This document shows, in pieces, positions 27,475 to 50,014 of a stretch of DNA of 64,000 nt (positions are counted from its first letter, which is position 1; each line of letters starts with the position of its first letter). The DNA lies in IMG/VR virus record IMGVR_UViG_3300020165_000007, positions 206,384 through 270,383 of that record. The stretch is one strand, 5' to 3'. A program made the position numbers and the translations under genes. The notes under the pieces were generated by a model, which saw nothing but the letters and a program-made list of their open reading frames with translations, did no database searches and was not told where the DNA came from.

Positions 27475-28818
27475 TTACCTAAAGATATGTAATTTTTTAT
27501 TATTCTCAATCTCGTCAGGTATTTTAACGTTTGGACTATTCTTTAAGTTAATTACCTGTAGGTTTTTCAAGTTACTTATCCCCTTAGGTATCGTTGTAAG
27601 ATTATTATTGTTCGGTAAGGATAGGAATACTAAATCTTTCAACTCTTCGATTTCTTTAGGTAGTTCTTTAATAATACCTTCCAAGTGAAGGGCATTTAGA
27701 TTTTTAAATCTACCTAGCGTTTTTGGGATAGTAAGTGCGACTTCATCTGAAGATTCCCCGTATCTATTATTCGACTTAACAAAATCAAATCTTTCAAGAT
27801 TATCAGGTAGAGTTTCAAAAAACTCATCAAACCCATATAATGATATAAACTTAGAAGCGGAATCTTTTGGATATTCAACAGATATCGAAGTTCCTTCTCT
27901 ATTAGTTAAACTTTTCATAAATTCCGGTTTAAATACTTCTTTAAGTTCTTCGTTTTTATTCAAAAATTCTATTAGATTAATTTGTCTATCATTTGCCCCC
28001 ATATACTGATTAGATGGGAAATGAAACTGATACCTATTTGCAGGTAATCCACTTTTTTCTCCTGTAGTCACACCTCCATCTCGGAAAGATTCAGGTTTGT
28101 TTGGAATTACCACATATAAAGGACCATCTTTAATATAAGTATTAAAGTAGTTACTTCTTCCAGGTGCAGATGTACACCAACCACTTTCACCTTTTGCAAT
28201 ATCTAAACCATATCCACCGTAAAAACAAGCCGCATCGTGCCCTAACTTTCCAGTGTCTTCGATTTTTACAACGGTCCACTTACTACCTTTAAAAATTACT
28301 TCACCACCTGGATGTTCATAAGTTTTAGCGGCTTCTTCTTTTTCTGATTTAGAAGCTTTAGTTTTATCCAAACTAAAATCTACAGTAATATCTGCTAATT
28401 TTTCAATATTAAGTTTATTAATATCTCTAAGTTCTTGGTCAAGTTGACCTTTGAACCTGTCGAACTTTTGTAAAGACTCTGTAGTTTTATATAAATCCTC
28501 AAAAAATAGTTCTTGTAACCTACTCATTTCACTTTTAAATTCTGAAGTACCATACTCCGATTCAGGCTCAAGTCTAAGAAATTGTTTTACCAACCACGGT
28601 GTATATGTACCGGCCTTTTTAATTTCGTCTCCGTCTCTACGAGTCGTAGGGTCAGCTAATACTATTTTATTCAAATCCTCTAAAGACATTCTAGCAGGTT
28701 TTACTTTGTCACCTTTTTTCTTAGGTTCAGTATAAGTCTTCCTAAGAATTTCATAACGACCCTGTTCTAAAATTATATGTCTAATAATACCACTAAATTT
28801 CATATTATTCTTTTTCAT
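27475..28818 (-). CDS. AACFYG..WCT domain protein with C-terminal leucine-rich repeats
   Basis: IIRHIILEQ leader (likely start 28803); LRRs IPKTLGRFKNLNALHL, LPKEIEELKDLVFLSL, IPKGISNLKNLQVINL; TATTTAT at 28819-28825. Confidence 0.8.
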   Translation of the reverse strand: MKKNNMKFSGIIRHIILEQGRYEILRKTYTEPKKKGDKVKPARMSLEDLNKIVLADPTTRRDGDEIKKAGTYTPWLVKQFLRLEPESEYGTSEFKSEMSRLQELFFEDLYKTTESLQKFDRFKGQLDQELRDINKLNIEKLADITVDFSLDKTKASKSEKEEAAKTYEHPGGEVIFKGSKWTVVKIEDTGKLGHDAACFYGGYGLDIAKGESGWCTSAPGRSNYFNTYIKDGPLYVVIPNKPESFRDGGVTTGEKSGLPANRYQFHFPSNQYMGANDRQINLIEFLNKNEELKEVFKPEFMKSLTNREGTSISVEYPKDSASKFISLYGFDEFFETLPDNLERFDFVKSNNRYGESSDEVALTIPKTLGRFKNLNALHLEGIIKELPKEIEELKDLVFLSLPNNNNLTTIPKGISNLKNLQVINLKNSPNVKIPDEIENNKKLHIFR

Positions 28819-28843: not shown

Positions 28844-29689
28844 TTACGAATTATAATTCAAAATTAATAGTTCGGTTCCTTTATTTTGTGTTTTTCCTTT
28901 TTTAGCTGACGCCGCTTTGACGAAGTCTTTCTGTTCCCAAAGATAATCATTTTTTGGAAACCACCCATTTAAAAGTTCAAAATCATAGTAAGATAATGAA
29001 AACTTTCCTTTGATATTGTTTAGAATTTTTGCCAACCTTTCGTGGTCATTCCTATCAAAGTCGTGATTAGAATAGTAGTTCTCTGTTTTCCAGTACGGTG
29101 GGTCTAAGTAAAAGTATGTCTTATCTCCATCATATTTGTTAATGAGTTCTTCAAAGTCCATATTTTCAACAAAGTTAATTTTTGAGAATTTGTCTATCCA
29201 CTTTTCGTTTTTCAGTTTATCTCTAAAAGTAAGGTATTTTGATTTGTACTTACCCTTTAAGTCGATGTAATTTGATGACTCTGGTTTACTGCCGCTGAAT
29301 ACCTGTGTAAGAATGTAAGCATACTTAGCAGCAACATCATAGTCAGGGTAATTTATTTCAAAGTCATCTGCAAATATCTCAGACTGGAACTCTTTGAATA
29401 GGTCTTTATATTCTGTAGGTGTGTTCTCCACTCCTCGTTGTTGACAAGGGATAGACTCAACAGATTTAAGAAGTTCTGTAGGGTTTTGCACACACATAAA
29501 GAGATTGTAGTTCAACGGATTGAAATCGTTATAAACAATGTTCTTTAGATTTGGGTACTCATCCAAATCCATATTGTAGTAACACCAAAACATACCTCCG
29601 AATGGTTCAACATATGTCTCCATATCTTTAGGGTAATATGGGACTATCCATTTACCTATCCTACTTTTTCCTCCTATATAACTAAGCAT
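28844..29689 (-). CDS. Dam/D12-class N6-adenine DNA methyltransferase
   Basis: YIGGKS, EPFGG, YNDFN, LDPPY; TATATTTG at 29707-29714. Confidence 0.92.
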   Translation of the reverse strand: MLSYIGGKSRIGKWIVPYYPKDMETYVEPFGGMFWCYYNMDLDEYPNLKNIVYNDFNPLNYNLFMCVQNPTELLKSVESIPCQQRGVENTPTEYKDLFKEFQSEIFADDFEINYPDYDVAAKYAYILTQVFSGSKPESSNYIDLKGKYKSKYLTFRDKLKNEKWIDKFSKINFVENMDFEELINKYDGDKTYFYLDPPYWKTENYYSNHDFDRNDHERLAKILNNIKGKFSLSYYDFELLNGWFPKNDYLWEQKDFVKAASAKKGKTQNKGTELLILNYNS

Positions 29690-29840
29690 ACTTATTAATT
29701 TTACTACAAATATAGTAAAGAAAATTCAAAAAGAAAATTAATCTTGATTTTTGAATTTTTCAATCAATACAGATATAACGGATATAGTTATTATTGAGAT
29801 TGAAAGGATTAAAAAAAGTATGTCGAATATTGGGAAACCT

Positions 29841-30776
29841 TTATACATAATGTATTAATAATACTATAGCTACTGAAACAAGTAGACCAACTAATAACTT
29901 TAAGAAATCTTTAGCTACTATAGGAAATACTTGTTTTAAATTACCTTTCTTAGTTAGGTATGTGTTTAAAGCAAGTTCTCTACCACACAACAATCCAACA
30001 AATACCCATGTAGTTGACATAGGGACGTTATTTAATTGTTTAAAATACAATAGTAGGAAAGCATACACTAAGTCAATTAAAGTCGCTGAGCGAACGTATT
30101 TTGTATTTTGTTTGTCAAGAACTATCTGTTGTATCTTACCACCTTGTTGATAAAATATCCATCCCAATCCTATAGTAAAAAAGGTTATAACACCTGACAG
30201 TTCAACAACTGAAAGTTGTCTTGGTAAGAACACTGCGATGTTTGCGATATCGTGTGAAAGCCACGTAAACCACAAAAAACTTGTGGTTAACCATTGTCCT
30301 ATTCTCCAATATTTTTTATTACTTTCTTTTATGTCGTTATCTTCGTTGAATACTCCTGATATTAAGAACCATAATCCGTACGCCGCCACAGCTGCCAGAC
30401 CATATCCTACAATACTTTTCATTAACATCTTCTCTAATACAAATGTTGACGCAAAAGCCGATAATACCAAAAATGATGTAGACACAGGAATACCTTTTCT
30501 TGTTAGTGCAACTAAAGCAAGAGGTGCAAGTGCGTGATACCACTGTACTTCTTGGAAGGGTATCTTATCTAATCTACCAAAGGATATGTCACCGTCATAT
30601 ACATTCCATCCATATATTAATGTGAAAGCCATTACGACTGAAGCTGCTAACCATAATACATACCATTTAAATTTTTCTTTATTTGATGCAATCCATGTGC
30701 CGAGCGTTTGTACACTATCATTGGCAATTACTGAGTAACCCGCCAATGTAAATCCTATTAACGAAAGTAATGTCAT
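29841..30776 (-). CDS. PiT/PHO4-like phosphate (or sulfate) permease
   Basis: Multi-TM; duplicated PiT-like signatures IANDSVQTLG and SHDIANIA, plus PVSTS and PMSTT. Confidence 0.7.
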   Translation of the reverse strand: MTLLSLIGFTLAGYSVIANDSVQTLGTWIASNKEKFKWYVLWLAASVVMAFTLIYGWNVYDGDISFGRLDKIPFQEVQWYHALAPLALVALTRKGIPVSTSFLVLSAFASTFVLEKMLMKSIVGYGLAAVAAYGLWFLISGVFNEDNDIKESNKKYWRIGQWLTTSFLWFTWLSHDIANIAVFLPRQLSVVELSGVITFFTIGLGWIFYQQGGKIQQIVLDKQNTKYVRSATLIDLVYAFLLLYFKQLNNVPMSTTWVFVGLLCGRELALNTYLTKKGNLKQVFPIVAKDFLKLLVGLLVSVAIVLLIHYV

Positions 30777-30780
30777 ATTT

Positions 30781-31227
30781 TTAAATTTTTATAGAAAATC
30801 TGAATCTTATGGTTTTAGAATTATCCCATCCAATTCTGTAAACAAATTTATTATTTTTATATGGTATGTCAACAGCTACTGCCAAATTATATAATTTATC
30901 ATACCAAAATTCTTGTTGTACCCAAAGTTTGAACTTTTCAAATTTGTAAATTAATCTAGGTTCAAACGTTGGTTGGTTATTTTCAATCTTATAATGTAGT
31001 GGTACACTAAATACTATCGGTGATTCTGCAAAATTAAAGTTGTGTCTGTATGTGACTCTATTCTCATCCAACTTTGTTTTGTGTCTGAGTTCAAGTCCTC
31101 CCTTCTCAGTAATTTTGTGACTAAATGTTATGTAGGATTTTCCGTTGGTTCTCATCTCATAACCTATTTTTTGGGATAGGAGACTACAACTGATTAATAA
31201 CATTAAAAATGTTAGTGTTAGTTTCAT
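30781..31227 (-). CDS. Small outer-membrane beta-barrel-like protein
   Basis: Signal peptide; alternating hydrophobic beta strands; C-terminal RFRFSIKI. Confidence 0.6.
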   Translation of the reverse strand: MKLTLTFLMLLISCSLLSQKIGYEMRTNGKSYITFSHKITEKGGLELRHKTKLDENRVTYRHNFNFAESPIVFSVPLHYKIENNQPTFEPRLIYKFEKFKLWVQQEFWYDKLYNLAVAVDIPYKNNKFVYRIGWDNSKTIRFRFSIKI

Positions 31228-31287
31228 AATAATCTATTTCTAACCATATATAGAAATAGATTATTTAAAATTTCACATTATCTAATA

Positions 31288-31305
31288 TGTTAACCTTGTG
31301 TTAAC
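31288..31305 (-). promoter_or_regulatory. Pho-box-like direct repeat (GTTAACA-N4-GTTAACA)
   Basis: Two perfect 7-mers with 11-bp period, ~60 nt upstream of the barrel/PiT operon. Confidence 0.5.
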
Positions 31306-31320
31306 AATTAAGAAACAATA

Positions 31321-31491
31321 TTACTTATAGCAATTCTTATAAGGTCTACACGAAGCTTTCTGTGAGAACCCCATATCTTTACAAAGCGTTTTTTCACAAT
31401 AAGATTTACTCATCTTACGAGTTCCCTTATCATTACTTTGTTCTTTCTCCTCTAAGTAGGATTTAATAACACGTTTAATAATACTATTCAT
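31321..31491 (-). CDS. 56-aa Cys-rich microprotein with YLEE leader (absent from track)
   Basis: MNSIIKRVIKSYLEEKEQ...YCEKTLCKDMGFSQKASCRPYKNCYK; TATTTAT at 31497-31503. Confidence 0.75.
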   Translation of the reverse strand: MNSIIKRVIKSYLEEKEQSNDKGTRKMSKSYCEKTLCKDMGFSQKASCRPYKNCYK

Positions 31492-31505: not shown

Positions 31506-31655
31506 ATGAAAGAAAAAAAAGAAGAAGGTTGTAGTAGTTGTAAAAAAGGATTAGACATTAAACAAAAGTCTATGGTAGTATTATCAGTTTATATATTTAT
31601 TACCTCTATATATGGAACCTATAAAATAATACAGAATGTAGTTTCACACTTTTAA
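31506..31655 (+). CDS. 49-aa CxxC plus TM microprotein (absent from track)
   Basis: MKEKKEEGCSSCKKGLDIKQKSMVVLSVYIFITSIYGTYKIIQNVVSHF. Confidence 0.6.
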   Translation: MKEKKEEGCSSCKKGLDIKQKSMVVLSVYIFITSIYGTYKIIQNVVSHF

Positions 31656-32618
31656 TTTTTCTATAATATTATTTTTCATCTCTGCATCCATAATTTCGTT
31701 AACTACACTCATTTTAACGTAAAAATCACCTACCCCACCATTAGTTTTATATCCTTTACCTTTTAACCTTAATGGTTTACCCGTCTCAGTATTTTTAGGG
31801 ATACTTATTAATACTTCACCGTCAGGGTGAGGGAGACTAATTTCATTTTCCATAATTAAATCATATAATTTAACCGATTTAGTATAAACTAAATCATGAT
31901 TAATTTTTTCAAAGTTATCACTATTAATTACCTCTATTTGTAATATTAAATCACCAAAACCTAAATTAGGTGTAAAATCACCCTTACCTTTAACTCTTAA
32001 ATATTCACCCGTATTTACATTTGGTGGAATATCTACAGTTATGTTCTCTATTTTTTGTTTAATCCCCTTACCCTGACAATTAAAACATGGGTCTATCATA
32101 ATACTACCCACTCCATTACAACTACTACACGGAGTATCTATTATATGGTTAACAAACCCTGAACCCATCTTTCTTCTTATGTTACCACTTCCTTTACAAG
32201 TTTGACATACATTCTTTTTACCTCCACTTCCAGCACAGGTACCACAAGTATTATTGGTTTGATAGGTTATCGCTTTACTAACACCTTTAAATGATTCGAT
32301 AGGGTTAATTTGTATATTTATTTTTTTGTCAGGTCTTCTTCTATTTTTTTGATTTTGACTCCTAAACTGATTCATAAAATTAGAAAAAGGGTCAAATCCA
32401 TTACTTCTTTGATTATTGAATAGATTAGGATTATCGTATTTCGCTTTTTTATCATCATCCGTCAATGTTTCATATGCCTCAACAATCTCTTTGAACTTGT
32501 CTCCCCCATTGGGGTTAACATCAGGGTGATACTTTTTAGATAACTTTCGATAAGATTTCTTAATCTCATCTTTGGTTGATTTTTTATTAACACCTAGTAT
32601 TTTATAGTAATCCTTCAT
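31644..32618 (-). CDS. dnaJ: DnaJ co-chaperone (class A-like)
   Basis: J domain with HPD; four CxxCxGxG-type repeats; C-terminal domain. Confidence 0.93.
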   Translation of the reverse strand: MKDYYKILGVNKKSTKDEIKKSYRKLSKKYHPDVNPNGGDKFKEIVEAYETLTDDDKKAKYDNPNLFNNQRSNGFDPFSNFMNQFRSQNQKNRRRPDKKINIQINPIESFKGVSKAITYQTNNTCGTCAGSGGKKNVCQTCKGSGNIRRKMGSGFVNHIIDTPCSSCNGVGSIMIDPCFNCQGKGIKQKIENITVDIPPNVNTGEYLRVKGKGDFTPNLGFGDLILQIEVINSDNFEKINHDLVYTKSVKLYDLIMENEISLPHPDGEVLISIPKNTETGKPLRLKGKGYKTNGGVGDFYVKMSVVNEIMDAEMKNNIIEKLKV

Positions 32619-47206: not shown

Positions 47207-47642
47207 AAAATAAAACCTCTACTCCACTTTCTTCAAACATTATTCTAGACCTTGCTGCGTGAGCATCCCAATGTTCACGATTACGAGTGGTGTCTTCTTT
47301 TTTAACATATATCTTTTTAATACCAGCATTAATTATACCTCTACAACAATCAGAACATGGAACACCACACGTTAGATACATCGTACAATCCTTTGTAGAT
47401 ACTCCGATACGTGCAGCATTCAATATTGCATTCATCTCAGCATGGACAATCCAATAATACTTCTCAGGTCTTACTTGTCTTTCATCAACTTCATCATCTA
47501 TACCACGAGGAAATGAATTATACCCTGTAGACACTATTTCATTGTCTTTACCAACAATTACAGCCCCTATCTGTGTACGTTTATCTTTAGACTTTAATTT
47601 AACAGTCTCAGCGATATTCAAAAAATATTCTTTCCAATTCAT
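47199..47642 (-). CDS. dCMP deaminase
   Basis: GAVIV, TGYNSFPRG, HAEMNAI, PCSDC. Confidence 0.93.
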   Translation of the reverse strand: MNWKEYFLNIAETVKLKSKDKRTQIGAVIVGKDNEIVSTGYNSFPRGIDDEVDERQVRPEKYYWIVHAEMNAILNAARIGVSTKDCTMYLTCGVPCSDCCRGIINAGIKKIYVKKEDTTRNREHWDAHAARSRIMFEESGVEVLFYE

Positions 47643-50014
47643 TGTACAACTTTTGATACGTTTTTAGTTTTTTCTATTTTTACGATAGAGTCAGACCATT
47701 GACTAACCATCGGATTGTGTGTTATAACAAATATTTTTTCAAAGTATGATTTAATCTTATGAAAAAACTCTGACACCATATCAAGGTTATCGTTTGATAT
47801 CTTACCAAACACCTCATCGAACACCACAATATTTGGTTTAGGTAATGAACATACTTTGGATAGTACCGCTCGTAATGCAAGTGAAGCTATAGTTCTTTCA
47901 TATCCACTACCACTACTCATAAGTTTTTCTATTTGGGTATTGTTATCTACCATCCAAAATTCCACTTCATCTTTTTCGGATATACGTACCTCAAGCTTAA
48001 ACTCTGCAGAGTCCATAAGAAGTCTTTGTAATTCAGAATTAATAACAGGAGTCATACTTCTCATAATCATTTTGGTTATACCTTTCTTACCAAACAATTC
48101 TAAATATATCTTATATACTCTTAGTTTTTCTTCTTCCTCTTTGATTCTAGTTATGAATCCATTAAGTTCTTCAATTTTATCTTTGTACTTATTTATATTG
48201 TTATTTGAGGTTGTTATGTTTGAATTGACTTCTTCTTTTTCATTTGTTAGTTCGTCCAATCTCATATCGGCTTTAAGTAGTACCTCATCAATTTTATTGT
48301 TATCCTTAACTTTAACCTCTTGTTCCCTAAACCTATTTAGTATATCTTCAACACCTTTCTTTTTTAACTCAAAAGACTCTATTTGTATTTCACACTTTTC
48401 TTTAACCAATTTGTTCTTTTCATACACATCAAATTGATTTTTAAGGTCGACAAATATTTTTTCTTCTTTTGTGTGTTTCTTAACTTCTTTTACGCACTTC
48501 TTAAGGTATTCTTTTAGTTCTATTAATTCTAATTTTTTGTTCTCAGAATATTCGGACTGAGCAAGTGTTATTCCACAATACTGACATTTGATTCCTCCTT
48601 CAAATTCTTTTAGTTCCCCCTCGATATCCTTAATCTTTGACTCAGTAGTACCAAAACTAATCTCAGACATTAACAACAGTTCTTTAACCCCGTCATGTTT
48701 ATCTTCCTCATACCCTTTTGGTGGTTCCGTAATGTCTAGTTCATCGATATCTTTCTGAGTGTTTGTAATCTTAGACTCGTAATTCTTTATATCTAAATCT
48801 AAGTCGTTTGGATTAACTCTAAGTAAGTCTTTATCAATTCCTGTATGTTTCTTCTGTATCCATTCATCACGGTATTTTTGTCCTTTATCAATTCTTTCGT
48901 TAACATCTTTTATTTGGTTATTATATATTTTAATATTAACCTTTTCCTCTGATATCTTTTCTTTATTGATTTCAATATCTGATTTTAAATCTTCAATATT
49001 ATATAGATTTGAGGTCATCCTTTTATTGAAGTTGGATACAATTTCTTTAGCCGCTTCTTCTTTAAGTTTTAAACTATCTAAACCTAAGAATCTTGATAGT
49101 ACCTGACCTCGTGCTGTTGGTTTAGAATCTATTAGTTCCTCTAAATTACTCGATGTGGTTAAGATAGTCATTAGGAAATCATTCATCTCACCTATGGACC
49201 TCTTAATGAACTCTTCGGTTTCCCTTCTTTGTTCTCCAGTAAAGTTAACCAAGGAACCGTCAACCAACTTCTTAAAGAAATCTAATTTGGTACTTACTGT
49301 AAACCCATCACCATTTCTTTTTGGTTTTCTTATAACCTCACGAACTATAATGTAGTTTTCACCGTCAATAGTAATATCACCTTTAACGCTAACTTTATTC
49401 TTATCTCTAAACCTATTGAATATCTCTTCAGCCTTATTTGTTTTGGTGGTGGTATTAAAGAATAAGAAAAGTAAAAGGTCTACTGTTAATACTGTCTTAC
49501 CTCCAAAGTTTGGTGGGTTAGATTCAACAGCGGTGATACCATTTACCTTATTAAAGTCTATTATTTGATTATCACCAAAAGATAAAAAGTTAGAAAACTC
49601 AATCCTATTTATATACCATTTTTTAAAGGGCGTGATATCTGATTTATCAGCACTTACTTTATTCTCAACAATATCATTAAATTCAAGTATTTCTTTTTCG
49701 TCACCCAATAACTCATGGACTTTTAAAAACTTAGTAATTAAATCTTTTTGAAAATTCTCATCGAGAATATTCATAGATACGTCAACCGACTGTATTTCTT
49801 CGTTTGAAGATTTTACTTTAGTAACTACATTAACATTTTTTGAACCGTACTTTTTTTCAAAGTAAGAACGGACTCTCTTGATTCTTTCTTGTGTGAAATT
49901 GTCAGGAGTGTCTTCCCATACAACTTGTATGTATGGGTTTTTTATTTCGTCTACTTTTAAATCGTGGTTCATATTAACATAGTCAAATTCTATCGGTTGA
50001 TTGAATAGGTCCAT
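47639..50014 (-). CDS. SbcC/Rad50/gp46-like ATPase with ~130-aa N-terminal extension
   Basis: FSNFLSFG, NFGGKT Walker A, CQYC zinc hook, SSGSGYE signature, FDEVFG, ITH. Confidence 0.92.
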   Translation of the reverse strand: MDLFNQPIEFDYVNMNHDLKVDEIKNPYIQVVWEDTPDNFTQERIKRVRSYFEKKYGSKNVNVVTKVKSSNEEIQSVDVSMNILDENFQKDLITKFLKVHELLGDEKEILEFNDIVENKVSADKSDITPFKKWYINRIEFSNFLSFGDNQIIDFNKVNGITAVESNPPNFGGKTVLTVDLLLFLFFNTTTKTNKAEEIFNRFRDKNKVSVKGDITIDGENYIIVREVIRKPKRNGDGFTVSTKLDFFKKLVDGSLVNFTGEQRRETEEFIKRSIGEMNDFLMTILTTSSNLEELIDSKPTARGQVLSRFLGLDSLKLKEEAAKEIVSNFNKRMTSNLYNIEDLKSDIEINKEKISEEKVNIKIYNNQIKDVNERIDKGQKYRDEWIQKKHTGIDKDLLRVNPNDLDLDIKNYESKITNTQKDIDELDITEPPKGYEEDKHDGVKELLLMSEISFGTTESKIKDIEGELKEFEGGIKCQYCGITLAQSEYSENKKLELIELKEYLKKCVKEVKKHTKEEKIFVDLKNQFDVYEKNKLVKEKCEIQIESFELKKKGVEDILNRFREQEVKVKDNNKIDEVLLKADMRLDELTNEKEEVNSNITTSNNNINKYKDKIEELNGFITRIKEEEEKLRVYKIYLELFGKKGITKMIMRSMTPVINSELQRLLMDSAEFKLEVRISEKDEVEFWMVDNNTQIEKLMSSGSGYERTIASLALRAVLSKVCSLPKPNIVVFDEVFGKISNDNLDMVSEFFHKIKSYFEKIFVITHNPMVSQWSDSIVKIEKTKNVSKVVQ

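What the first reader, a model, noticed from the sequence alone, without database searches (positions are those of the whole stretch)
29841..31305. Phosphate-permease plus outer-membrane barrel operon under a Pho-box-like repeat
Seen: a two-gene operon (barrel, then PiT-like permease, 4 nt apart) preceded by GTTAACA-CAAG-GTTAACA with 11-bp period. Established: PhoB-family regulators bind direct repeats with 11-bp period, and cyanophage pstS is controlled by host PhoR/PhoB through such boxes. Inference: a two-membrane phosphate uptake module wired to the host starvation regulator in a Bacteroidota phage, using PiT rather than PstS.
Basis: partly seen in the sequence, partly recalled or inferred. 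Interest (0 to 1): 0.7.

Follow-up and report, generated by a model that had tools for sequence, protein, structure and literature searches.

The report
Phage phosphate-uptake cassette with host-type Pho box
A 270-kb marine phage of Flavobacteria-like bacteria carries a two-gene cassette (a tiny outer-membrane barrel plus a stripped-down PiT-type permease copied from its hosts). In front of it is the same 11-bp-spaced TTAACA repeat that precedes the hosts' own copy of the permease, next to a PhoB/PhoR-like sensor pair, so the phage probably lets the host's phosphate-starvation switch drive extra phosphate import.

Summary
On the minus strand a 148-aa secreted protein (30781-31227) and a 311-aa membrane protein (29841-30776) lie 4 nt apart. 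GTTAACA-CAAG-GTTAACA (31288-31305) sits 61 nt before the first ATG.

The repeat alone is not beyond chance: 11 such 7-mer repeats occur in the window against 7.5±2.5 expected. Comparison rescues it:
- It is the best match in the whole 270-kb phage genome to a matrix built from cellular sites.
- TTAAC-N6-TTAAC lies at -77 to -110 before cellular orthologues. In Flavobacteriales these follow a PhoB/PhoR-like pair and precede an ACR3 arsenite pump.
- In one other lineage the adjacent regulator passes NCBI's PhoB cut-off.
- Proteobacterial-type loci carry E. coli-like CTGTnAC-AAAA-CTGTnAC boxes instead.
- The phage encodes no OmpR/PhoB-type regulator of its own.

The permease model matches only the PiT fold (TmPiT 6L85) and keeps the phosphate/sodium-site Asp and Ser/Thr residues. 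It is below Pfam's PHO4 threshold.

The small protein models as a 10-stranded outer-membrane barrel whose invariant residues are charged and line the lumen.

Substrate, regulator binding and induction remain untested. I class it as a new variant of a known kind (Pho-regulated phage phosphate genes).

The parts
31288..31305 (-). Tandem direct repeat GTTAACA-CAAG-GTTAACA (11-bp period), the candidate binding site for a host OmpR/PhoB-family regulator. It also reads as the palindrome TGTTAAC-N5-GTTAACA.
   Evidence: Sequence. It is the top hit in the whole phage genome (18.7 bits) for a matrix built from cellular sites. The same motif lies upstream of cellular orthologues.
31277..31304 (-). Sigma-70-like match TTAACA-16 nt-GATAAT that overlaps the first repeat. 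This is a rival reading of the repeat as a -35-like hexamer.
   Evidence: 10 of 12 positions; the number of such matches in the region is not above the shuffles.
31228..31265 (-). Perfect 15-bp inverted repeat in the 5' leader. The folded stem runs into the AUG.
   Evidence: -19.1 kcal/mol, z -4.76. It is degraded in L017 and absent in L027, so it is lineage-specific.
30781..31227 (-). Gene for a 148-aa secreted 10-stranded beta-barrel, a putative outer-membrane channel.
30777..30780 (-). 4-nt spacer (AAAT) between the two genes.
   Evidence: Related phage cassettes keep a 2-12 nt spacing.
29841..30776 (-). Gene for a 311-aa minimal PiT-fold permease with two inverted five-helix repeats and no scaffold helices.
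29721..29759 (-). AT-rich 12-bp perfect inverted repeat followed by a U-rich run, a possible weak terminator of the cassette.
   Evidence: It is not significant on its own (the region's z-score is -1.5).

Best explanation
The locus is a phage auxiliary-metabolism cassette for phosphate import across both membranes of a marine Flavobacteriales host.

The second gene is a host-derived, minimal PiT-type secondary transporter for the inner membrane. By inference it is Na+- or H+-coupled.

The first gene is a phage-specific 10-stranded outer-membrane beta-barrel. Its invariant residues are charged and face the lumen. By inference it is a small anion-selective channel, or at least a lumen-dependent outer-membrane function.

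Transcription is proposed to start downstream of two TTAACA half-sites spaced 11 bp apart. This is the same box that precedes the hosts' own permease gene beside a PhoB/PhoR-like two-component system. Since the phage has no such regulator, the host's phosphorylated PhoB-like regulator would switch the cassette on when the infected cell is phosphate-starved. That would help supply phosphorus for replicating a 270-kb genome.

Shown: gene order, both folds, conserved site residues, origin of the permease, conservation of the box in cellular orthologues, and the link to PhoB-like regulators.
Inferred: the substrate, channel activity, regulator binding and induction.
For: Folds:
- Permease: pLDDT 91.5. 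The only significant PDB hit is TmPiT 6L85 (E 1.9e-5, TM 0.64). All 29 top Swiss-Prot models are PiT family. 23 of 46 family members touch PF01384.
- The residues that bind Pi and Na in TmPiT/hPiT2 (PMC7413737) have invariant counterparts: N19-D20, H175-D176, P97-V-S-T-S and P252-M-S-T-T.
- Barrel: pLDDT 88.7 with 10 strands. It matches transmembrane barrels. Strand residues alternate, with a hydrophobic outside and invariant E24, R26, R48, R57, H78, K80, E82, E89, E106, D135 and R141 inside.

Linkage:
- The barrel+permease pair recurs in unrelated phage neighbourhoods.
- Gammaproteobacterial MAGs have permease+Porin_4 in one operon.

Regulation:
- CTTAACA-N4-CTTAAC(A/C) lies at about -90 in all Flavobacteriales loci with the order RR-HK-permease-ACR3.
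- The box is the only strong hit in those 6-13 kb loci and the top hit in the phage genome.
- Eight other phage cassettes carry host-type boxes more often than chance (Fisher p 0.001 without the window; best hits at -66 to -87 in 8 of 9).
- The neighbouring regulators best match PhoB, and one passes the equivalog cut-off (322 vs 296 bits).
- JGI names the Flavobacteriales regulator PhoP.
- Proteobacterial-type loci carry CTGTnAC-AAAA-CTGTnAC.
- The cyanobacterial Pho box is CTTAACCT at 11-bp period (PMC1906773).
- There is no Trans_reg_C in the phage.

Origin and precedent:
- The tree joins phage and Flavobacteriales permeases with 100/96 support.
- A SAR11 preprint independently proposes what looks like the same kind of PiT-like family (not aligned here) as an alternative phosphate transporter (10.64898/2026.08.15.744057).
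Against: - The repeat alone is no rarer than chance. It is also a palindrome and overlaps a -35-like hexamer.
- The closest relative has a mismatch in one half-site. Several phage cassettes have only degenerate repeats or no convincing box (L030, L042).
- PHO4 scores 26.6 bits against a cut-off of 33.7. A family profile finds no solved structure by sequence.
- PiT-family members can carry sulfate (CysP is among the best fold matches).
- The Flavobacteriales regulator and kinase are below NCBIfam's PhoB/PhoR cut-offs.
- In roughly 1-Mb Gamma MAGs the box occurs only at this permease, so the site could belong to a dedicated regulator rather than a global Pho regulon.
- The barrel occurs without the permease in some phages (L019/L020) and in a Flavobacteriaceae MAG.
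- Ten-stranded natural barrels are often not open pores.
- No Bacteroidota -7 element (TAnnTTTG) is evident after the phage box.
- A strong leader hairpin covers the AUG.
- RNA-library coverage is flat over all neighbouring genes, so it is uninformative.
Confidence: 0.5

Rival explanations
1. The cassette is a transport module, but not for phosphate or not under phosphate control. The PiT-fold permease carries another anion (sulfate as in B. subtilis CysP, or arsenate/another oxyanion). The TTAACA repeat would then be the site of a dedicated permease-linked OmpR-family regulator that senses something other than phosphate starvation.
For: CysP is the second-best Swiss-Prot fold match. The family falls below the PHO4 cut-off. 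The second signature reads HD instead of ND. The Flavobacteriales gene sits beside ACR3. In Gamma MAGs the box is unique to this gene, and the adjacent receiver-less wHTH is the only Trans_reg_C protein in the genome. The Flavobacteriales RR and HK are below the PhoB/PhoR cut-offs.
Against: In four lineages the adjacent regulator's best model is PhoB, and one passes the equivalog cut-off. Proteobacterial-type loci carry E. coli-like Pho boxes. The Pi-site Asp and Ser/Thr residues are invariant. In SAR11 a PiT-like family of this kind is mutually exclusive with Pst/Pho. ACR3 next to a phosphate importer makes sense because arsenate enters cells through phosphate carriers (my own knowledge).
Confidence: 0.2
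2. The repeat in the phage is not a host-regulator site. It is a chance duplicate, a -35-like hexamer of an ordinary promoter, or a palindromic operator for a dimeric phage protein. The cassette would then follow the phage's own temporal programme.
For: The repeat is not rarer than chance on its own. GTTAAC is palindromic, and the element lies in a 14-nt imperfect palindrome. TTAACA-16-GATAAT matches a sigma-70 pattern. L017 has a mismatch, and other phage cassettes are degenerate.
Against: It is the top-scoring site in 270 kb for a matrix trained only on cellular sites. It lies at the same distance from the ATG as in the hosts. The other phage cassettes are enriched for host-type boxes at the same position. 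Bacteroidota do not use the sigma-70 -35/-10 pattern (my own knowledge).
Confidence: 0.25
3. The barrel is not a partner channel of the permease. It serves another outer-membrane role, such as superinfection exclusion, receptor masking or envelope remodelling, and merely travels with the permease.
For: It stands alone after a ribonucleotide reductase gene in phages L019/L020 and alone in a Flavobacteriaceae MAG. Natural 8-10-stranded barrels are commonly closed. Small phage outer-membrane proteins form a family of their own (Phage_OMP appears among the Atlas neighbours).
Against: Loops are minimal, and nearly all invariant residues are charged and face the lumen, which does not fit a surface-recognition role. 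All 14 barrel+permease loci, which lie in several unrelated phage contexts, have the genes 2-12 nt apart. The independent cellular operon permease+Porin_4 shows the same logic. Designed 10-strand barrels of this shape were made as nanopores (8uzl; the conduction is my own knowledge).
Confidence: 0.3

Closest known systems
Cyanophage pstS/phoA auxiliary genes controlled by the host PhoR/PhoB through Pho boxes
   Same: A phage carries a host-derived phosphate-acquisition gene. An 11-bp-period direct repeat of the host's type lies in front of it, and the phage has no regulator of its own. The half-site here (G/CTTAACA) is close to the cyanobacterial Pho box CTTAACCT (PMC1906773).
   Different: The host phylum is Bacteroidota. 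The gene is a secondary PiT-type carrier instead of the periplasmic binding protein PstS. It is coupled to an outer-membrane barrel. Binding and induction have not been shown here.
PiT / PHO4 family (TC 2.A.20, PF01384), e.g. TmPiT (PDB 6L85), E. coli PitA, B. subtilis Pit and CysP
   Same: The fold is the same, with two inverted repeats and re-entrant hairpins. The Asp of both signature motifs and both P-x-S-T-(S/T) hairpin tips are conserved. The length is similar to the short archaeal and Bacillus members (297-354 aa).
   Different: The score is below Pfam's gathering score, and no sequence-level hit to any solved structure was found. The scaffold helices TM4/5 of TmPiT are missing. The second signature is S-H-D instead of G-x-N-D. 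No Trp is visible in the last helix.
PiT-like OG0001433 of SAR11 (SAR11 Genome Atlas preprint, 10.64898/2026.08.15.744057) and 'pitA' of offshore SAR11
   Same: It is a PiT-fold protein missed by Pfam and KEGG profiles, found by Foldseek to resemble 6L85 at about 17% identity, and proposed as an alternative phosphate importer. The 62-67% identical marine loci found here, two of them next to an alphaproteobacterial tmRNA, are probably this group.
   Different: That report is about cells, not phages. It describes no barrel partner and no upstream box. I did not align the two families directly.
Viral PHO4/pit genes: prasinovirus PHO4 (PMC3429862) and soil-phage pit (PMC10987575)
   Same: Viruses carry PiT-superfamily phosphate carriers acquired from their hosts.
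   Different: The virus groups and host groups differ. I saw no report of a co-transcribed outer-membrane protein or of a host-type Pho box.
Phosphate-starvation porins (E. coli PhoE, Pseudomonas OprP/OprO), small specific channels of the KdgM/NanC family, and Pfam Phage_OMP (PF24653)
   Same: These are outer-membrane barrels that let anions reach an inner-membrane carrier. Here the lumen is rich in Arg, Lys and His, and KdgM is among the best solved fold matches (TM 0.58).
   Different: The barrel has only about 129 mature residues and 10 strands, against 12-16 in those families. It has no Pfam match to any of them. No trimer or arginine ladder has been shown.

Membership tests
PiT / PHO4 (PF01384) | Score at or above Pfam's gathering threshold (33.7 bits) | tested here: not met
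   26.6 bits, E 3.8e-6, covering only residues 220-311. 23 of 46 family members match at E <= 0.01, with a best E of 1.5e-11.
PiT / PHO4 (PF01384) | Fold: two inverted five-helix repeats with re-entrant hairpins, as in TmPiT | tested here: met
   The pLDDT 91.5 model has 6L85 as its only significant PDB match (TM 0.64) and 29 of 29 top Swiss-Prot matches in the PiT family (TM 0.56-0.71). The scaffold helices TM4/5 are absent.
PiT / PHO4 (PF01384) | Signature G-phi-N-D-phi with a conserved Asp in both repeats (TmPiT D22 and D258; PMC7413737) | tested here: inconclusive
   The N-terminal repeat reads I-A-N19-D20-S (D20 invariant, N19 nearly invariant). The C-terminal repeat reads S-H175-D176-I/V. 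Both Asp are kept, but Gly is lost and Asn is replaced by His in repeat 2. The match was made by eye, not by a structural alignment.
PiT / PHO4 (PF01384) | P-phi-S-x-T hairpin tips that bind phosphate | tested here: met
   P97-V-S-T-S and P252-M-S-T-T are invariant or nearly invariant.
PiT / PHO4 (PF01384) | Phosphate transport activity | not testable with these tools
   This needs uptake assays. CysP shows that the fold can carry sulfate.
Pho box / PhoB regulon member | Two or more direct repeats at 11-bp period upstream of the gene | tested here: met
   GTTAACA-CAAG-GTTAACA at 31288-31305, starting 78 nt upstream of the ATG.
Pho box / PhoB regulon member | Half-site sequence equals that used by the host lineage | tested here: inconclusive
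   It matches the box upstream of cellular orthologues of the same gene. It could not be compared with pst/pho promoters of Flavobacteriales because no such genome could be reached.
Pho box / PhoB regulon member | The regulator is PhoB/PhoR | tested here: inconclusive
   The Flavobacteriales RR scores 213.8 bits against a 270 cut-off, and the HK is below its cut-offs, though PhoB and PnpS/PhoR are the best models. The L105 RR scores 322.3 against 296.2 on TIGR02154, above the cut-off.
Pho box / PhoB regulon member | Box placed where it replaces the upstream promoter element | tested here: inconclusive
   In Gamma MAGs the box ends 11 nt before TACAAT. In Flavobacteriales it abuts TAAGTTTG-like elements. 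In the phage no clear Bacteroidota -7 element follows the box.
Pho box / PhoB regulon member | Regulator binding and induction by phosphate limitation | not testable with these tools
The metatranscriptome contigs are uninformative.
Outer-membrane beta-barrel protein | Cleavable signal peptide | tested here: met
   An N-terminal hydrophobic helix (residues 2-14) is followed by ...S|Q, with Q19 invariant in 36 sequences. An N-terminal Gln after cleavage is typical of Bacteroidota (my own knowledge).
Outer-membrane beta-barrel protein | Closed antiparallel barrel with an even strand number, a hydrophobic outside, and a C-terminal strand with alternating hydrophobic residues | tested here: met
   Ten strands. 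Transmembrane barrels are the best matches. Residues alternate in every strand. The C terminus reads R-F-R-F-S-I-K-I.
Outer-membrane beta-barrel protein | Membership of a named OMP/porin family (KdgM, OMP_b-brl, Porin_O_P, Phage_OMP) | tested here: not met
   No Pfam, NCBIfam or PHROG match below E 0.001. The resemblance is structural only.
Outer-membrane beta-barrel protein | Channel activity and anion selectivity | not testable with these tools
   This needs bilayer or liposome assays.

The most novel reading that the evidence does not exclude
Marine Bacteroidota phages have assembled a portable, minimal two-membrane phosphate import pathway. It consists of a phage-invented 10-stranded, ~129-residue anion channel and a scaffold-less PiT carrier, and it is plugged into the host's phosphate-starvation regulator through a TTAACA-N5-TTAACA box. 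This would also be the first definition of the Pho box of marine Flavobacteriales, and it would show that the poorly annotated PiT-like family is a Pho-regulon phosphate importer across several marine phyla.
Probability: 0.35. Interest if true: 0.75.

Novelty: new variant of a known kind. Interest (0 to 1): 0.6.

Why it matters
Phosphate limits growth over large parts of the ocean, and a 270-kb phage genome is costly in phosphorus. The known example of a phage using the host's phosphate sensor is the cyanophage pstS gene. This locus would extend that principle to heterotrophic Flavobacteriales, to a different transport mechanism (a secondary carrier instead of an ABC binding protein), and to both membranes at once.

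It also yields three testable by-products:
- a candidate Pho box for marine Flavobacteriales;
- functional context (PhoB/PhoR neighbours, Pho-type boxes, porin or ACR3 partners) for a widespread PiT-like family that standard profiles miss;
- one of the smallest natural candidates for a specific outer-membrane channel.

Tried and rejected
- Whole-genome test of the box upstream of pst/pho genes in Flavobacteriales. The single genome-contig scan returned only five non-Bacteroidota loci.
- Protein-DNA docking of the Flavobacteriales regulator's DNA-binding domain on the phage box. The tool did not fold it and gives no verdict for DNA partners. This is no evidence either way.
- Metatranscriptomes. 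Four RNA libraries hold contigs across the operon, but depth is flat over all neighbouring genes and DNA carry-over cannot be excluded. No transcript ends were reported.
- Rfam found nothing on the related leaders. PADLOC found nothing. A family profile against PDB sequences found nothing. PHROGs and NCBIfam gave nothing for either protein.
- PstS-like genes of the Gamma MAGs were fetched but not pursued. The strict box pattern does not occur there.
- Lipoprotein reading of the barrel (the Cys in LLISCS): rejected. The Cys is not conserved, whereas the Gln after the cleavage site is invariant.
- The leader hairpin as a conserved regulatory RNA: rejected, because it is not kept in the closest relatives.
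Full report
**Setting.** The window is the last 64 kb of a single 270,383-bp IMG/VR virus record. The record has 33% GC and a cluster of 12 tRNA genes. It has a Terminase_6N match in a 596-aa frame and a phoH gene. Its only DNA matches among deposited phages are to 630-735 kb uncultured phages. Nearly all genes of the window are on the minus strand. Neighbours of the locus are an LRR protein, a Dam-type methyltransferase, a full-length DnaJ and small unknown proteins.

**The observation.** On the minus strand, 30781..31227 encodes 148 aa and 29841..30776 encodes 311 aa. TAA, four bases (AAAT) and ATG separate them. The minus strand of 31288-31305 reads GTTAACA-CAAG-GTTAACA, and this 18-mer is unique in the genome.

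Two reservations apply:
- GTTAAC is its own complement, so the element is equally an inverted repeat.
- Exact 7-mer repeats at 11-bp period are common in this AT-rich DNA: 11 in the window against 7.5 +/- 2.5 expected.

The repeat therefore carries no weight on its own. What follows is what gives it weight.

**The permease.** Pfam gives only a sub-threshold PHO4 match (26.6 bits against 33.7). NCBIfam and PHROGs give nothing.

The family itself is real and large. More than 6,000 close relatives turned up in marine data. There are 816 representatives at E <= 0.001 in the 50%-identity library, but not the tens of thousands expected if canonical PiT proteins were within reach. A profile of 46 members finds no solved structure by sequence.

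The AlphaFold model is confident (pLDDT 91.5, pTM 0.90). Its only significant PDB match is the Na+/phosphate transporter TmPiT (6L85; E 1.9e-5, TM 0.64). The 29 best Swiss-Prot models are all PiT-family proteins. They include the short archaeal and Bacillus members of similar length, and also the sulfate carrier CysP.

The helices form two five-helix repeats with nothing between them, so the two scaffold helices of TmPiT are missing.

The TmPiT paper (PMC7413737) lists the motifs G-phi-N-D-phi and P-phi-S-x-T in each repeat. It names D22, D258 and the Ser/Thr hairpin tips as the Pi/Na site. Here N19-D20, H175-D176, P97-V-S-T-S and P252-M-S-T-T are invariant or nearly so across the family. I matched these by eye, not by structural superposition.

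A 2026 preprint on SAR11 describes a PiT-fold protein missed by profile annotation, 16.8% identical to 6L85 and mutually exclusive with Pst/Pho. It proposes that protein as an alternative phosphate importer. It is probably the same wider family, but I did not align them.

**The small protein.** It has only 85 relatives, with no Pfam domain. Almost all are on viral or phage-like contigs.

Q19 directly after the signal peptide is invariant. The Cys in the signal peptide is not conserved. This argues for signal peptidase I cleavage before Gln, a Bacteroidota habit (my own knowledge), and against a lipoprotein.

The model (pLDDT 88.7) has ten antiparallel strands with very short loops. The best solved matches are:
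- a designed 10-stranded transmembrane barrel (8uzl, TM 0.65);
- the KdgM porin (TM 0.58);
- other outer-membrane barrels.

AFDB and Atlas neighbours are OMP barrels, including a viral Porin_4-like cluster, YfaZ and NanC/KdgM.

Within the strands, residues alternate. Ile, Phe, Val, Leu, Tyr and Trp lie on one face. On the other face lie nearly all the invariant residues: E24, R26, R48, R57, H78, K80, E82, E89, E106, D135 and R141, plus the nearly invariant D120, R131 and R143 (the facing is inferred from the strand pattern, not from coordinates). The last strand ends R-F-R-F-S-I-K-I, as a BAM substrate would (my own knowledge).

Conservation concentrated in a basic-leaning lumen, combined with minimal loops, fits a specific channel or lumen-binding function better than a surface-recognition role. 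Channel activity is inferred, not shown.

**Linkage of the two genes.** The pair, 2-12 nt apart, recurs in phage contigs with quite different neighbours:
- a 122-kb contig, next to thymidylate synthase;
- contigs up to 255 kb, next to CHU_C and RNase H-like genes;
- a contig where it follows a ribonucleotide reductase.

The barrel also occurs alone in two phage contigs. A 38%-identical copy stands alone in a Flavobacteriaceae MAG beside HD and metallophosphoesterase genes.

Independently, ~1-Mb gammaproteobacterial MAGs have the permease overlapping by 11 nt a 368-aa Porin_4 gene. So 'inner-membrane carrier plus outer-membrane channel in one operon' has arisen twice.

**Origin.** In a maximum-likelihood tree of 78 permeases, all barrel-linked (phage) sequences and all cellular Flavobacteriales sequences form one clade (100/96). 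The cellular ones form a subclade (100/99) beside two groups of phage-cassette sequences. The cellular proteins are 76-78% identical to the phage protein and differ mainly by an acidic, Thr-rich C-terminal tail.

**Regulation, the central point.** In Flavobacteriales MAGs and metagenome contigs the order is conserved: pheT, a glyoxalase-like gene, a response regulator, a histidine kinase, the permease, and ACR3 (412 bits against a 283 cut-off).
- The regulator's best NCBIfam models are the two PhoB models (213.8 and 206.5 bits, below cut-offs of 270 and 296).
- The kinase's best models are PnpS and PhoR, also below cut-off.
- JGI labels the regulator PhoP.

Between kinase and permease every such locus has CTTAACA-N4-CTTAAC(A/C), starting 88-90 nt upstream of the ATG. 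Another Flavobacteriales MAG has three to four GTTAAC-type repeats at 11-bp period.

In the Gamma MAGs the permease follows a 116-137-aa receiver-less winged-helix protein. Its best model is the C-terminal domain of PhoB, and it is the only Trans_reg_C protein in the genome. There the box CTTAA(C/T)A-N4-(C/T)TTAA(C/T)A ends 11 nt before TACAAT, the classical Pho-box geometry (PMC1906773). In those genomes the strict pattern occurs at essentially no other place.

In a further lineage (L105) the divergently transcribed regulator passes the PhoB equivalog cut-off (322.3 against 296.2).

Among 59 non-redundant loci of the 62-67%-identity group, about a dozen to fifteen carry CTGTnAC-AAAA-CTGTnAC with at most 2-3 mismatches at -78 to -128. 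This is the E. coli type of Pho box (PMC4415409 gives CTGTCAT).

The cyanobacterial Pho box is CTTAACCT repeated at 11-bp period, and predicted sites include GTTAACCT (PMC1906773). A TTAAC core therefore has precedent.

**Applying this to the phage.** I built a position matrix only from the cellular half-sites.
- Its best hit in the whole 270-kb phage genome is the site at 31288 (18.7 bits; the next best is 16.1, inside a coding region).
- The phage has no Trans_reg_C protein at E <= 1, so only a host protein could read the site.

In the other phage cassettes the box is weaker:

| Locus | Sequence |
|---|---|
| L017 | GTTAACA-CAAG-GCTAACA |
| L008 | AGTAACA-ATAA-GTTAACA |
| L031 | GTTAATA-GTTT-GTTACCA |
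| L027 | GTTATCT-ATTT-GTTAATG |
| L042, L049 | three GTTA-type repeats |
| L030 | nothing convincing |

Combined over the eight loci other than the window, host-type boxes are enriched (Fisher p 0.001; p 0.007 without L031, which shares the upstream gene). The best hit lies at -66 to -87 in 8 of 9 loci. That positional window was chosen after seeing the data.

I could not identify a Bacteroidota -7 element after the phage box. A sigma-70-like TTAACA-16-GATAAT overlaps it.

**Other features of the locus.** A perfect 15-bp inverted repeat (31228-31265) folds at -19.1 kcal/mol (z -4.8), and the stem includes the AUG. It is degraded or absent in the closest relatives. It is therefore lineage-specific and possibly a translational brake, but not part of the conserved design.

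An AT-rich 12-bp inverted repeat followed by Us lies 82-120 nt after the permease stop. It could be a weak terminator.

**Expression.** Four metatranscriptomic libraries, one of them DNase-treated, contain contigs 90-100% identical to the operon. One is a 1,547-nt contig running from the methyltransferase gene through the permease into the barrel gene. Depth is flat across all neighbouring genes, and the tool warns that DNA may be present. This shows the phage was in those samples. It does not show regulated transcription.

**Verdict.** Its interpretation survives every computational test I could apply:
- The fold assignments and the Bacteroidota host are well supported.
- The link of this permease family to PhoB-type regulators and Pho-type boxes across several lineages is well supported.
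- The link to phosphate specifically is moderately supported. The same holds for the functionality of the box in this particular phage and for the channel role of the barrel.

The main rivals are another substrate or a dedicated regulator, a non-functional or differently used repeat, and a barrel with an unrelated role. None is excluded.

I therefore rate this as a new variant of a known kind. What is new is the divergent minimal carrier, the phage-specific mini-barrel partner and the Flavobacteriales-type box.

Noticed in passing
L048-L102 (e.g. L100:389-428, L063:2455-2494); not in the window: A short hairpin lies directly before the Shine-Dalgarno sequence and ATG of the 62-67%-identity permeases. 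The consensus is GAGCGACGGGGUAAAGCCGUCAAGCAAAGGAG, with a 5-bp stem and a conserved GGUAAAG loop. All five pairs covary: 20 double-change cells against 4.3 in shuffles (0 of 500), and 93% of cells are paired against 17-41% when the partner is slid. There is no Rfam match. Often a second hairpin with the same loop plus a U-run precedes it. This is a candidate new cis-regulatory RNA of this transporter family.
   Followed up: partly
L011/L015/L034/L036/L039/L110: RR-HK-permease-ACR3: In marine Flavobacteriales the PiT-like gene is always flanked by a PhoB/PhoR-like pair upstream and an ACR3 arsenite exporter downstream. This suggests coupled phosphate uptake and arsenic detoxification.
   Followed up: partly
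L023-L025 (G001-G003): Gammaproteobacterial MAGs of about 1 Mb carry a receiver-less PhoB-type winged-helix protein of 116-137 aa (frameshifted in L025). It is the only Trans_reg_C protein in the genome and sits directly before a permease+Porin_4 operon.
   Followed up: partly
L063:3492-3829 and L072:3489-3887: An alphaproteobacterial (permuted) tmRNA gene lies immediately downstream of the permease in two marine loci. This is a hint that this clade is alphaproteobacterial (SAR11-like) or sits at a tmRNA-linked integration site.
   Followed up: no
L019 and L020 (barrel at L020:2938-3360): In some phages the barrel gene stands alone, without the permease, after a class II-like ribonucleotide reductase and before small membrane proteins and an amidase-like gene.
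   Followed up: partly
window 31321-31491 (-): The 56-aa ORF just upstream has a Cys-rich C terminus (CEKTLCKDMGFSQKASCRPYKNCYK). It is conserved in L017 and L031, and no family matches it.
   Followed up: no
window 31644-32618 (-), 28844-29689 (-), 27475-28818 (-), 47639-50014 (-): The phage encodes a full-length DnaJ (J domain, Zn finger and C-terminal domain), a Dam-class N6-adenine methyltransferase, a 447-aa protein with C-terminal leucine-rich repeats, and an SbcC-like nuclease subunit.
   Followed up: no
L013:7029-7046 and L037:3521-3538: A second good box (CGTAACA-CTTC-CTTAACA) lies at the 3' end of the cellular permease gene. In L013 it precedes a 549-aa beta-helix protein with a T9SS sorting tail, which may be another target of the same regulator.
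   Followed up: no
P0088 (412 aa): One database homologue carries an internal tandem duplication of about 95 residues of the C-terminal repeat. It is probably an assembly artefact and was left out of the structure alignment.
   Followed up: no
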